From Octopus sinensis (Eukaryota): a stretch of 64,000 nucleotides of DNA. The stretch spans positions 139,438,001 through 139,502,000 of the forward strand of contig NC_043000.1 in the NCBI RefSeq assembly GCF_006345805.1. The letters are read 5' to 3'. Both the position numbers and the translations under genes were made by a program. A model generated the notes under the pieces. It worked only from the letters and a program-made list of their open reading frames with translations. It ran no database searches and was not told the DNA's origin. Shown here in pieces: positions 62,145 through 64,000 of this stretch (the stretch's first letter is position 1; each line of letters opens with the position of its first letter).

Positions 62145-62848
62145 TATATATCAAAGTATCTTTAGAGACAGAAAACCCCATATATATATATATATAGTTA
62201 TGTTATTATATACATGTGTGTGTTTGTATACATGTGTATATGTAAATGTGAATATGTACATACATTTACATACACCTACATACATACATACATATATATA
62301 TATATATACTTATGCATACATATATATACATATACATAAATATATATAAGTATGTATAAATTTGTATATGTGTGTGTATGTGTGTGTGTGTCTATGTATA
62401 TGTATATATCTTATATATGTATGCATGCATGTGTGTGTTTGTGCATGTACATTTTTATATCTGAATACAAGAACATACATGCAAGTGTCTGTAATGTGTT
62501 TGCATATAAATCTTTTATTTCAGACTGTATGCAAATATATATGTAAAATTATTAAGATGTGAGCGAATGTCTGCATGTGTTTCTCTATGTAACATTTCAT
62601 TTGAATATATGCCTCTGTTCATGTGTATAGAGAGAAATATATGCAAGTAGATATATACATGTATATATAACATCGCTATATTTAATCATCATCAACCTCA
62701 TCACCACCACCATCACCATCACGTACACCAGCTAAATGATGATGATGTTGATCAGGCATACACGTATGGATCTATGTGTATGTATGCATATATATATATA
62801 CATACATGCATATATATATATATACATATATACATGCATATATATATT
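59470..62848. repeat. field of (TA)n/(CA)n/(TG)n microsatellites with short minisatellite-like duplications
   Basis: Direct reading; e.g. GTAGATATAAT..TATAGCTATAA..CTTGCATATAAA recurs near 59537, 60403 and 60511. Confidence 0.9.
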
Positions 62849-63168
62849 GGATTAACTGTTGGAGTGGACGGACGTCTATTTGTTTCTCTCCCAAGTCAGT
62901 AGCAAGCTACACAGCTTCAAAACTAACTGACCTTAATATATATATATTTGTAACCACGTGTTTGCCTACAAACCCGTAAGTACGTTTTCATTTAACTACA
63001 AATTGTTATATACACCTGTTTTTCTTTTAATATCCTCAAACAACCAAATAATCAAAAACTCACACCCTTAAGAGAGAACATTTATATATATATACACTTC
63101 TTTAACTCCAAGAAAGAATATATATATTTTCAAAAATCAAAAGGAAAACAAACAAAAGAAAAACAAAC

Positions 63169-64000
63169 ATGACTAACTTGCAGGCCTGCAACAGACGAAA
63201 TTGGTCTGATAACGAAATTGATGTTTTGATAAACACATGGCTCTCTCTTTCCCAAACAGAAAATCTAAATGTCTTGTGTTTGAATGAGATTGCCGAAAAA
63301 ACATCACAAGTGGTCAACACACGATCCGTCAAACAGATTCGTAGCAAGTTGAAACATATCGAAGTATCTTTCAAACTGATAAGAGGTCATTATGAAAAGC
63401 TTCTACATATTTTCACGGTTCAAGAACAACAACAGCTAGAAAATCAGCAGCCACAACAACAACAACAGAATGAGCCACTCCTGGTTCCCAGCACAATGGC
63501 TGACCCTGACATCGGTCAGGCGCAACAACAACAACAACAGCCACAGCAACAAGAACAACAGCCACTCCTCAACTCTAGCTTACTAGACGATTCACTAAAT
63601 GCCAGTATCTTTTCACCGCTCTCACAGCAACCACCACAATTATCATCATCATCATCACCACCGCTGCCACCATCGTCTTCTATCACCAAAAATACCAACA
63701 GAAAACCAAATAAGAAACCACTGCCCTCTTCCCCCACATCACCACCTCAATACTACTGCAGTAACAAAAACTTAAAGAAACATAGGAAGCAGAATGCGCC
63801 CCCCACGGCTCAAACAAGAAATCCCCAAATATGCCGCTATTCACTGCGCCAGAGACTCTGCACAAATAGTGACTGCATCTTCACGCATCTACCCGGCACT
63901 AGACGCACTACCGGCCAAGGCCAAAGCACGCATCCCACAATAACATCAACACCACCAATAGTAAATCGAAATTCAAAACACACACAACTCGGAGTCCCAA
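63169..64000 (+). CDS. open ORF (at least 277 codons, truncated by the window end): Myb/SANT-like domain, Q/P/S-rich linker, CCCH zinc finger
   Basis: Hand-translated without a stop: MTNLQACNRRNWSDNEIDVLINTW...EIAEK...RSVKQIRSKLKHIEVSF...QQQ...CRYSLRQRLCTNSDCIFTH (C-x8-C-x4-C-x3-H, 63832-63888). Probably absent from the ORF track because it has no stop codon in the window. Confidence 0.75.
   Translation, partial: MTNLQACNRRNWSDNEIDVLINTWLSLSQTENLNVLCLNEIAEKTSQVVNTRSVKQIRSKLKHIEVSFKLIRGHYEKLLHIFTVQEQQQLENQQPQQQQQNEPLLVPSTMADPDIGQAQQQQQQPQQQEQQPLLNSSLLDDSLNASIFSPLSQQPPQLSSSSSPPLPPSSSITKNTNRKPNKKPLPSSPTSPPQYYCSNKNLKKHRKQNAPPTAQTRNPQICRYSLRQRLCTNSDCIFTHLPGTRRTTGQGQSTHPTITSTPPIVNRNSKHTQLGVP

What the first reader, a model, noticed from the sequence alone, without database searches (positions are those of the whole stretch)
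62848..64000. Hidden intact ORF combining a Myb/SANT-like domain and a CCCH zinc finger, starting just after a microsatellite field
At least 277 stop-free codons in a window where all other coding remnants are broken. The N-terminus has trihelix/MADF-like W spacing (RRNWSDNEIDVLINTW..RSVKQIRSKLKHI), followed by poly-Q/P/S and C-x8-C-x4-C-x3-H. A plausible 137-nt 5' UTR intron lies upstream (GTAAGT at 62976, CTCCAAG ending 63112), and unique sequence begins abruptly after (TA)n at ~62848. A DNA-binding plus RNA-binding pairing would suit an ORF1 or N-terminal module of a young retroelement (PLEs are known to retain introns; R2/R4-group elements carry Myb domains), a Harbinger-type Myb protein, or a domesticated host gene. 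The window cannot distinguish these.
Basis: partly seen in the sequence, partly recalled or inferred. Interest (0 to 1): 0.7.

Follow-up and report, generated by a model that had tools for sequence, protein, structure and literature searches.

The report
New ORF1 type of a LINE retrotransposon
The open reading frame at the window's end is real. It is almost certainly the first gene (ORF1) of a LINE-type jumping gene, built from a Myb/SANT-like DNA-binding domain and a CCCH zinc finger, a combination I did not find described for LINE ORF1 proteins.

Summary
Observation confirmed. ATG 63169 opens a frame that runs stop-free to the window end: 277 codons, or 298 counted from the preceding stop. 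This is longer than in any of 2000 local shuffles, and the other five frames carry 9-23 stops. Residues 9-73 match Pfam PF13837 (Myb/SANT-like) at 29.0 bits for the domain alone, against a cut-off of 27. C222-x8-C231-x4-C236-x3-H240 is a CCCH pattern whose four ligands are invariant in six relatives.

An exhaustive search of 1.8 billion proteins found only eight weak relatives. For five of them the DNA was fetched, as loci L001-L005:
- L001 and L002 carry both modules in the same order, directly upstream of an ORF2 with an APE endonuclease and a reverse transcriptase.
- L003 carries a CCCH-only ORF1 directly upstream of an APE-plus-RT ORF2.
- L004 also has a CCCH-only ORF1. Its downstream product is 75% identical to the L003 endonuclease product, but was not scanned against Pfam.
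- L005 is too short to show a second gene.

So this is ORF1 of an APE-type LINE. It is not a Penelope-like element, not an R2/R4 element and not a Harbinger gene. About 80-110 codons of ORF1, and all of ORF2, should lie beyond base 64000.

The proposed 5' UTR intron is no better than chance. LINE clade, copy number and activity remain untested.

Novelty: a new variant of a known kind. Interest is moderate.

The parts
62788..62847 (.). (TA)/(TACA)-type microsatellite directly upstream. It is the flank of the element, and possibly its insertion target.
   Evidence: Tandem Repeats Finder arrays at 62788-62847. Two other copies of the family, L005 and L013, also start directly after (TGTA)n or (TA)n.
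62848..63168 (+). Non-repetitive leader, the putative 5' UTR of the element. Its true 5' end is not established.
   Evidence: Sequence read. There is no significant similarity to the leaders of L001 or L002: local alignment scores fall within the shuffle range. GTAAGT is at chance frequency.
63169..63999 (+). LINE ORF1, first 277 codons, cut off by the window end. Relatives are about 360 aa long, so roughly 80-110 codons are missing.
   Evidence: open frame; homology to the ORF1 regions of L001 and L002; alignment A3, showing the missing C-terminal part.
63193..63387 (+). Myb/SANT-like (PF13837, trihelix-type) domain, aa 9-73.
   Evidence: Pfam 29.0 bits against a cut-off of 27 for the domain alone; 4 of 5 family members hit. 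Relative P0002 scores 31.7 bits. It is 54% identical over 83 aa to L001. The AlphaFold2 model shows helices at 14-30, 35-48 and 54-73, but confidence is low at pLDDT 61.6.
63418..63813 (+). Q/P/S-rich low-complexity linker, aa 84-215. Its second half and the C-terminal part are strongly basic.
   Evidence: Composition is Q 29, P 21 and S 19 of 132 residues. In aa 171-277, K+R = 18 and D+E = 1.
63832..63888 (+). CCCH zinc-finger motif: C222-x8-C231-x4-C236-x3-H240.
   Evidence: Motif located. All four ligands, plus P, S, D, F, L, G, T and R, are invariant in six sequences from two ORF1 subtypes. Weak profile matches only: Pfam zf-CCCH_2 at E 0.057, and the best PDB profile hits are the CPSF30 and Nab2 CCCH fingers at E 0.2-0.9.

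Best explanation
The ORF is the first open reading frame (ORF1) of an APE-type non-LTR retrotransposon (LINE) whose ORF2 lies beyond the window end.

**Shown:**
- The frame is open.
- It has a Myb/SANT-like N-terminal domain and a conserved CCCH motif.
- Both modules are homologous, in the same order, to ORF1 regions that sit directly upstream of APE-plus-RT ORF2s in other contigs.

**Inferred mechanism:**
- ORF1p is translated from the element's own transcript.
- The CCCH finger and the strongly basic C-terminal half bind that RNA in cis.
- A short conserved C-terminal helix, seen only in relatives and expected just past base 64000, mediates self-association. Together these give a ribonucleoprotein particle with ORF2p.
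- The Myb/SANT-like domain adds DNA or chromatin contact, helping to bring the particle to its integration sites. ORF2p then nicks the target and reverse-transcribes the RNA there.
- The module is portable. The same Myb-plus-CCCH ORF1 is attached to two different ORF2 lineages.
For: 1. **Open frame far beyond chance**. The sense strand is 38% A and 14% G, an A bias described for some LINEs, for example mammalian L1 (abstract of PMC7140322, listed).
2. **Relatives split by module.** Exhaustive phmmer gave 8 hits. P0002, P0003 and P0005 match the N-terminal part. P0001, P0004, P0006 and P0007 match the finger part. P0008 is a dinoflagellate C3H1-type protein matching only aa 230-253.
3. **L002.** The Myb ORF (354-827) and the CCCH and C-terminal pieces are followed by an intact 1093-aa ORF2: Exo_endo_phos at E 3.6e-9 and RVT_1 at E 6e-34.
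4. **L001.** The same ORF1, frameshifted, is followed by an endonuclease-type product (Exo_endo_phos_2, 24.9 bits, under the cut-off of 27.4) and an RT (RVT_1, E 1.9e-26).
5. **Window ORF against these loci (tblastn).**
   - L001: Myb 54% over 83 aa (E 1e-27); finger 62% over 50 aa (E 1e-14).
   - L002: both modules at E 1e-14.
   - L013 is a fourth, decayed copy with the same order of modules.
6. **CCCH-only ORF1s.** L003 has a multi-CCCH ORF1 directly followed by an APE-plus-RT ORF2. L004 has a similar ORF1, and its downstream product is 75% identical to the L003 endonuclease product.
7. **Constraint.** dN is 0.16-0.33 with dS saturated between copies, consistent with constraint on both modules.
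8. **Module exchange.** ORF1 of L001 and L002 is alignable throughout. The next ~1.3 kb (APE and linker) is not, and the RT core is only 38% identical.
Against: - The window ends at codon 277, so ORF2, the ORF1 stop, the 3' end and any target-site duplication are unseen for this copy.
- No second copy lies in the 64-kb window, and no near-identical protein is in the databases. Copy number and youth are therefore unknown.
- All four related copies have broken ORF1s, so no intact full-length element of this type was seen.
- The structure models of both modules are low confidence (pLDDT 61.6 and 52.5), and Foldseek found nothing.
- The CCCH profile matches are below the curated thresholds.
- RNA binding, DNA binding, oligomerisation and targeting are all inferred, not shown.
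Confidence: 0.85

Rival explanations
1. A host gene domesticated from such a LINE ORF1. It would be a single-copy Myb/SANT-plus-CCCH protein kept by the host, with no ORF2 downstream.
For: This copy is intact over all 277 visible codons, whereas the four related copies (L001, L002, L005, L013) are broken. No second copy is in the window.
Against: - No conserved orthologue was found among 1.8 billion representative proteins; the best hits are 30-57% identical fragments.
- The related ORF1s whose downstream sequence could be read (L001 to L004) are followed by LINE-type ORF2 sequence.
- The locus sits in a gene-poor stretch of microsatellites and transposon remnants.
- The strand composition is strongly A-biased.
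Confidence: 0.08
2. The Myb-like accessory gene of a PIF/Harbinger DNA transposon.
For: Harbinger elements encode a Myb/SANT-like (trihelix-type) DNA-binding protein. This is from my own knowledge; the PF13837 match is.
Against: - Both modules are homologous to ORF1s that precede APE-plus-RT genes.
- No transposase-like family was found among the eight of the window's 31 other open frames of 120 codons or more that were scanned. The only hits were an RT remnant and a Mos1-type HTH remnant 24 kb away.
- The CCCH module is, to my knowledge, not part of Harbinger Myb proteins.
Confidence: 0.02
3. The N-terminal module of a Penelope-like element, or of an R2/R4-type (restriction-like endonuclease) LINE.
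For: R2-group proteins carry zinc-finger and Myb motifs at the N-terminus. Penelope-like elements can retain introns.
Against: - In the relatives the protein is a separate ORF1. It ends with its own stop and is followed by an ORF2 that begins with an APE-type endonuclease.
- No GIY-YIG or restriction-like endonuclease was seen.
- The intron signal is at chance level.
Confidence: 0.02
4. A chance open frame produced by low-complexity CAA/CCA-rich sequence.
For: The middle third (aa 84-215) is Q/P/S-rich low complexity, which tends to stay open.
Against: - None of 2000 shuffles reached 298 codons.
- The non-repetitive ends carry a Pfam-level domain match.
- The finger shares 12 invariant residues with distant relatives.
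Confidence: 0.01

Closest known systems
ORF1 proteins of APE-type LINEs of the CR1 / L2 / Jockey group (ORF1 types I-V of Khazina and Weichenrieder 2009; Metcalfe and Casane 2014, PMC4120745)
   Same: - A separate first ORF of roughly 360 aa lies directly upstream of an APE-plus-RT ORF2 (relatives L001 and L002).
- It is a modular protein with a nucleic-acid-binding zinc module.
- The ORF1 module appears to have been exchanged between ORF2 lineages. This is the 'reticulate' pattern described for CR1/L2 ORF1s.
   Different: - None of the described modules (RRM, CCHC knuckle, L1-type coiled coil/Transposase_22, PHD, esterase) is detected by Pfam.
- Instead it has a Myb/SANT-like domain and a CCCH finger. 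Neither word occurs in the text of PMC4120745, in the 2026 CR1-group survey PMC13343379 or in the gastropod non-LTR paper PMC11203168.
- It would fall into 'type V, unclassified'.
- The RT clade of these elements was not determined here.
CCCH-only LINE ORF1s found here (P0004, P0006, P0007; loci L003, L004)
   Same: They share the finger CxxSxxxxLCTxxDCxFxHLxGTxR and a C-terminal 'FLxxxxL' helix. The L003 APE is 28.6% identical to the L001 APE.
   Different: They have two or three extra CCCH-like fingers upstream and no Myb/SANT-like domain. L004 has a different cysteine-rich N-terminal ORF instead.
R2-group LINE proteins and TRAS/L1 ORF2 Myb-like regions
   Same: A Myb-type DNA-binding module sits inside a non-LTR retrotransposon protein, where it serves target recognition (from my own knowledge; R2 structures are listed).
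   Different: There the Myb motif is part of the RT-bearing protein. Here it is in ORF1, belongs to the PF13837 trihelix-like family, and is paired with a CCCH finger.
Cellular PF13837 proteins (plant trihelix factors, animal MSANTD/ZSCAN29-like proteins, Harbinger Myb-like proteins)
   Same: The profile match covers positions 1-71 of the 89-position model, including the N-terminal W and the long third helix with the K/R-Q-I-x-x-K motif.
   Different: - The genomic context is different (LINE ORF1).
- There is no partner transposase.
- The second conserved tryptophan of the family appears to be replaced (by eye, not tested).

Membership tests
APE-type non-LTR retrotransposon (LINE), ORF1 | ORF lies directly upstream of, and on the same strand as, an ORF2 encoding an APE endonuclease and a reverse transcriptase | not testable with these tools
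   The window ends at codon 277. The feature is met in relatives:
- L002: ORF2 at 1282-4563, with Exo_endo_phos and RVT_1.
- L001: an endonuclease-type product at 1626-2351 (Exo_endo_phos_2, 24.9 bits, under the cut-off of 27.4) and RVT_1 at 2348-3700.
- L003 for the CCCH-only subtype.
APE-type non-LTR retrotransposon (LINE), ORF1 | Sequence homology of the whole protein to ORF1s of elements with proven APE-plus-RT genes | tested here: met
   By tblastn, the Myb part is 54% identical to L001 over 83 aa (E 1e-27), and the finger part 62% over 50 aa (E 1e-14). Both parts also match L002 at E 1e-14, in the same order. L013 shows the same order.
APE-type non-LTR retrotransposon (LINE), ORF1 | Many dispersed copies, mostly 5'-truncated, with target-site duplications and a characteristic 3' tail | not testable with these tools
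   Only one copy is in the window, and the host genome is not available. Relatives of the L002 ORF2 (L006, L007) are 5'-truncated. They end in a hairpin, then AATAAA, then a short TGAC-type repeat.
Myb/SANT-like DNA-binding domain (Pfam PF13837) | Profile score at or above the curated cut-off (27 bits) | tested here: met
   - Domain alone (aa 1-85): 29.0 bits, E 1.5e-6.
- Whole ORF: 25.6 bits, where low-complexity sequence lowers the score.
- P0002: 31.7 bits.
- 4 of 5 family members hit the model.
Myb/SANT-like DNA-binding domain (Pfam PF13837) | Three-helix bundle fold | tested here: inconclusive
   The AlphaFold2 model has helices at 14-30, 35-48 and 54-73, but pLDDT is 61.6. Foldseek against the PDB gave no match with E below 1. 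A profile search of PDB sequences gave only coiled-coil noise.
CCCH (C3H1) zinc finger | C-x(6-14)-C-x(4-5)-C-x3-H spacing, with all four ligands conserved among relatives | tested here: met
   C222, C231, C236 and H240. All four are invariant in six sequences from two ORF1 subtypes.
CCCH (C3H1) zinc finger | Significant match to a curated CCCH profile or to a solved CCCH structure | tested here: inconclusive
   - Pfam zf-CCCH_2: 14.4 bits against a cut-off of 25.8.
- The family profile's best PDB hits are the CPSF30 and Nab2 fingers, but at E 0.2-0.9.
- The AlphaFold2 model has pLDDT 52.5.
Described LINE ORF1 types I-IV (RRM+CCHC; coiled coil+RRM+CTD; PHD; esterase) | Presence of RRM, CCHC knuckle, Transposase_22, PHD or SGNH-esterase modules | tested here: not met
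   Pfam at E up to 10 lists none of these for the window ORF. The missing C-terminal ~100 aa in relatives also shows none (P0001: no Pfam family).
Penelope-like elements | Penelope-type RT with a C-terminal GIY-YIG endonuclease, in a single ORF | tested here: not met
   The relatives' downstream genes are N-terminal APE (Exo_endo_phos, Exo_endo_phos_2) followed by RVT_1. Their best PDB matches are LINE-1 ORF2p and R2 proteins.
R2/R4-group LINEs | Single ORF with N-terminal zinc-finger and Myb motifs, RT, and a C-terminal restriction-like endonuclease | tested here: not met
   In the relatives ORF1 ends with its own stop, and ORF2 starts with an APE domain.
PIF/Harbinger Myb-like gene | Paired DDE (DDE_Tnp_4) transposase gene within terminal inverted repeats | tested here: not met
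   No such family was found among the eight other long open frames of the window that were scanned. The relatives' neighbours are APE-plus-RT genes. Downstream of 64000 is unseen.
CR1/L2 group of LINEs | RT phylogeny placing ORF2 inside the group; 3' end with a hairpin and short tandem repeat instead of poly(A) | not tested
   No labelled reference RT set was available. The 376 relatives of the L002 ORF2 carry no informative names. The only hint is that L006 and L007 end in a hairpin plus a short TGAC-type repeat.

The most novel reading that the evidence does not exclude
The Myb/SANT-like domain makes ORF1p a sequence-specific DNA-targeting subunit. It would steer an otherwise ordinary APE-type LINE into TA-rich microsatellites. 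This would be a targeting principle carried by ORF1 rather than by ORF2, on a module that can be swapped between LINE lineages. The hint is that three of the five copies with a visible 5' flank begin directly after a microsatellite: (TA)n in L013, (TGTA)n in L005 and (TA)/(TACA)n in the window.
Probability: 0.15. Interest if true: 0.65.

Novelty: new variant of a known kind. Interest (0 to 1): 0.45.

Why it matters
LINE ORF1 proteins are the least understood part of the most abundant class of animal transposons. The published catalogue of their building blocks is RRM, CCHC knuckle, coiled coil, PHD and esterase. It includes neither a Myb/SANT-like DNA-binding domain nor a CCCH finger in the papers I could search.

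- A DNA-binding domain in ORF1 would be a new way for an APE-type LINE to choose or hold its target.
- A CCCH finger would be a second, independent solution to binding the element's RNA.
- The same ORF1 sits on two different ORF2 backbones. That adds a clean example of module exchange between LINE lineages.
- For annotation, the practical point is that this ORF should be masked as transposon, not called as a host transcription factor.

Tried and rejected
- **Word-indexed protein searches** found no outside relative. The whole ORF gave nothing, and the family alignment A3 gave only its own members. Only the exhaustive search found relatives.
- **JGI metagenome scan** with the family alignment: 77 pattern matches, none confirmed.
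- **Names and organisms.** No cluster of relatives carries a useful name, so host organisms and LINE clade stay unknown.
- **Structure.** Both AlphaFold2 jobs gave low-confidence models. Foldseek on the Myb model was uninformative, and a PDB profile search with the Myb alignment gave only GCN4-type coiled-coil noise.
- **ORF1 types of the nearest ORF2 relatives.** L008 and L010 look by eye like coiled coil plus RRM, L009 like coiled coil plus esterase, and L004 has a cysteine-rich N-terminal ORF. Pfam and PDB sequence searches confirmed none of these labels. I claim only that they are different from the Myb-plus-CCCH ORF1.
- **5' boundary.** Leaders of the window, L001 and L002 show no similarity beyond shuffles. 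A shared AAGTCAGT (Inr-like) 8-mer is expected by chance between two leaders of about 350 nt.
- **Intron.** No evidence beyond a chance-level GTAAGT.
- **Second copy in the window.** None; only low-complexity matches. The RT remnant at 20.5-21.1 kb belongs to another LINE family, at 20-29% identity.
- **Rfam.** No RNA family anywhere in the window.
- **Alignment method.** For alignment only, the frameshifted ORF1 pieces of L001 and L002 were joined, with X at each stop and at the L002 join.
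Full report
**1. The observation**

The sequence from 62848 to 64000 was read directly. An ATG at 63169 opens a frame that runs to the last full codon of the window, 63999. That is 277 codons, or 298 stop-free codons counted from the preceding stop at 63103-63105. The other five frames of the same stretch carry 9-23 stops.

In 2000 dinucleotide-preserving shuffles of the stretch, the longest open frame averaged 100 codons and never exceeded 239. 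In 20 shuffles of the whole 64-kb window the maximum was 159. It is the longest open frame of the window. The next is a 235-codon fragment of a reverse transcriptase at 20439-21143 on the minus strand.

A (TA)/(TACA)-type microsatellite ends at 62847, and non-repetitive sequence follows. The motif C-x8-C-x4-C-x3-H is at residues 222-240.

**2. The two modules**

*Myb/SANT-like domain.* Pfam PF13837 (Myb/SANT-like DNA-binding domain) matches residues 9-73.
- The whole ORF scores 25.6 bits (E 1.7e-5), just under the curated 27 bits.
- The first 85 residues alone, free of the Q/P/S-rich linker, score 29.0 bits (E 1.5e-6).
- Four of five family members hit the same model. One relative, P0002, scores 31.7 bits.

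*CCCH finger.* Support comes mainly from conservation. In six sequences from two ORF1 subtypes, the four ligands and eight further residues (P, S, D, F, L, G, T, R) are invariant. Profile support is weak. Pfam zf-CCCH_2 gives E 0.057. A family profile finds the CPSF30 and Nab2 CCCH fingers as its best PDB matches, but only at E 0.2-0.9.

*Rest of the protein.* Residues 84-215 form a Q/P/S-rich linker. Residues 171-277 are strongly basic, with 18 K+R against 1 D+E.

*Structure.* AlphaFold2 models of both modules, made with shallow alignments, were of low confidence (pLDDT 61.6 and 52.5). They add only a predicted helix pattern for the N-terminal domain. Foldseek found nothing.

**3. What it is**

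A word-indexed search found no relatives. An exhaustive phmmer search of 1.84 billion representative proteins found eight, all weak (E 1e-8 to 7e-4), and they split cleanly. Three match only the N-terminal domain and four only the finger region. The eighth is a dinoflagellate C3H1-type protein that matches only the finger core. None has a useful name. The contigs that encode them settle the question.

| Locus | ORF1 region | What follows |
|---|---|---|
| L002 | Myb ORF, then CCCH and C-terminal pieces; broken | Intact 1093-aa ORF2: Exo_endo_phos (E 3.6e-9) and RVT_1 (E 6e-34) |
| L001 | Same ORF1, broken by a frameshift at a short internal duplication | Endonuclease-type product (Exo_endo_phos_2, 24.9 bits, under the cut-off of 27.4) and an RT (RVT_1, E 1.9e-26) |
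| L003 | Multi-CCCH ORF1 without the Myb domain | APE-plus-RT ORF2 directly downstream |
| L004 | Similar CCCH-only ORF1 | Product 75% identical to the L003 endonuclease product |
| L013 | Fourth, decayed copy: Myb, S/P-rich linker, finger, C-terminal helix, in the same order | Contig too short |

The window ORF aligns to both parts of L001 (54% over 83 aa, E 1e-27; 62% over 50 aa, E 1e-14). It also aligns to both parts of L002 (E 1e-14 each), in the same order.

The family alignment shows that complete ORF1s are about 360 aa. They end with a conserved helix (NSFLxMLNLxKEIQRSIL) and a PQC[WC]H tail. The window copy therefore lacks roughly its last 80-110 codons, and its ORF2 should begin a few hundred bases beyond 64000.

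Between copies, dN is 0.16-0.33 while dS is saturated, as expected for modules under constraint. The sense strand is 38% A and 14% G. A-rich sense strands are described for some LINEs, for example mammalian L1 (abstract of PMC7140322, listed).

I conclude that this is ORF1 of an APE-type LINE.

**4. How it most likely works (inferred)**

By analogy with other LINE ORF1 proteins (review text quoted), the protein would coat the element's own RNA. The CCCH finger and the basic C-terminal half are the likely RNA-binding parts. The conserved C-terminal helix is the likely self-association part.

The Myb/SANT-like domain is the unusual part. The simplest reading is that it gives the particle DNA or chromatin contact at or near integration sites. 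One lead bears on this. The window copy, L005 and L013 all begin directly after TA-rich microsatellites. This would fit insertion into such repeats. These genomes are dense in microsatellites, however, and no background test was possible.

None of these activities was shown.

**5. Module exchange**

L001 and L002 share ORF1 along its whole length. The following ~1.3 kb (endonuclease and linker) is not alignable, and their RT cores are only 38% identical. The L001 endonuclease instead resembles that of L003, a CCCH-only element, at 28.6% identity.

Conversely, the closest relatives of the L002 ORF2 (43-48% identical: L008, L009, L010) carry unrelated ORF1s. Pfam and PDB searches could not name those ORF1 types.

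This is the modular, reticulate pattern described for ORF1s of the CR1, L2 and Jockey lineages (PMC4120745).

**6. Comparison with what is known, and novelty**

The classification of ORF1 types lists RRM, CCHC, L1-type coiled coil with RRM and CTD, PHD and esterase, plus an 'unclassified' bin. Neither 'CCCH' nor 'Myb' occurs in:
- the Jockey-superfamily survey;
- a 2026 survey of CR1-group elements;
- a gastropod non-LTR study.

Five further full-text searches found no paper describing either module in a LINE ORF1.

Myb motifs are known in R2-type proteins and inside some ORF2s (my own knowledge), but there they are part of the RT-bearing protein. I therefore rate this a new variant of a known kind. 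It is an ordinary class of element with an ORF1 architecture I could not find described. The literature search covers open-access papers only, and Repbase entries could not be consulted.

**7. What is not supported or not known**

- **Intron.** The proposed 137-nt 5' UTR intron rests on a GTAAGT that occurs 31 times in the window against 38 expected. The leaders of the window, L001 and L002 share nothing beyond chance.
- **5' end.** The true 5' end of the element is not established.
- **Clade.** The RT clade is not determined. The only hint is that L006 and L007 end in a hairpin and a short TGAC-type repeat rather than a long poly(A).
- **Activity.** Whether this copy is young or active cannot be judged from one truncated copy. 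No second copy lies in the window.

**8. Verdict**

The feature is real and correctly noticed. The named groups (Penelope-like elements, R2/R4, Harbinger) are not. Interest is moderate, mainly for transposon specialists.

Noticed in passing
L001 391-1582 vs L002 375-1453; L001 1582-2921: Two elements share the Myb-plus-CCCH ORF1, but their endonuclease and linker regions cannot be aligned and their RT cores are only 38% identical. The L001 endonuclease resembles that of L003, a CCCH-only element. This suggests that a whole ORF1 was exchanged between LINE lineages.
   Followed up: partly
window 62788-62847; L005 1-30; L013 1-22: Three copies of the family begin directly after TA-rich microsatellites: (TA)/(TACA)n, (TGTA)n and (TA)n. 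This could reflect an insertion preference, or simply the high microsatellite density of these genomes.
   Followed up: no
L001 1009-1037 and 1118-1146: The start of the finger (RNPK[IV]CRYSLR) is present twice. The upstream copy lies in the Myb reading frame and soon runs into a stop; the complete finger lies in another frame. L013 also has two finger copies (826-885 and 981-1073).
   Followed up: no
L002 1282-1444 (and the matching part of L001): The ORF2 start codon lies 163 nt upstream of the ORF1 stop, in another frame. This overlap is the best-conserved DNA between L001 and L002 (74% over 125 nt). It could be a coupling signal for ORF2 translation.
   Followed up: no
L005 about 400-1000: After the Myb part, this copy runs into a frame that by eye looks like a piggyBac-type transposase (LDKHLLAFRWRCSFRIYI...). 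That would mean the LINE copy is interrupted there. This was not checked with a profile search.
   Followed up: no
window 62893-62900; L001 174-181; L002 99-106: AAGTCAGT (AAGTCAGC in L002), containing the initiator-like TCAGT, occurs in all three leaders 200-270 nt before the ATG. A shared 8-mer between two such leaders is expected by chance, so this is only a lead for the transcription start.
   Followed up: partly
window 20439-21143 (-) and 38491-38949 (+): There is a reverse-transcriptase remnant (RVT_1, E 4e-5), only 20-29% identical to the ORF2s studied here and so from another LINE family. There is also a Mos1/mariner-type HTH remnant (E 1e-3). The window is otherwise microsatellite-dense with no Rfam match.
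   Followed up: partly
window 19286-19953, both strands: About 600 nt of trinucleotide repeat reads as long poly-D, poly-H, poly-S and poly-I open frames in several frames. These are artefactual ORFs of 180-200 codons, to be ignored in any ORF scan.
   Followed up: no
L006 6500-6620; L007 3810-3925: Two 5'-truncated copies of a LINE 71% identical to L002 in ORF2 share an identical 3' UTR. It holds a G+C-rich inverted repeat (GGGGTCTCTCAC...GTGAGGGACCCC), then AATAAA and a short TGAC/TTGAC repeat where the two copies' flanks diverge.
   Followed up: partly
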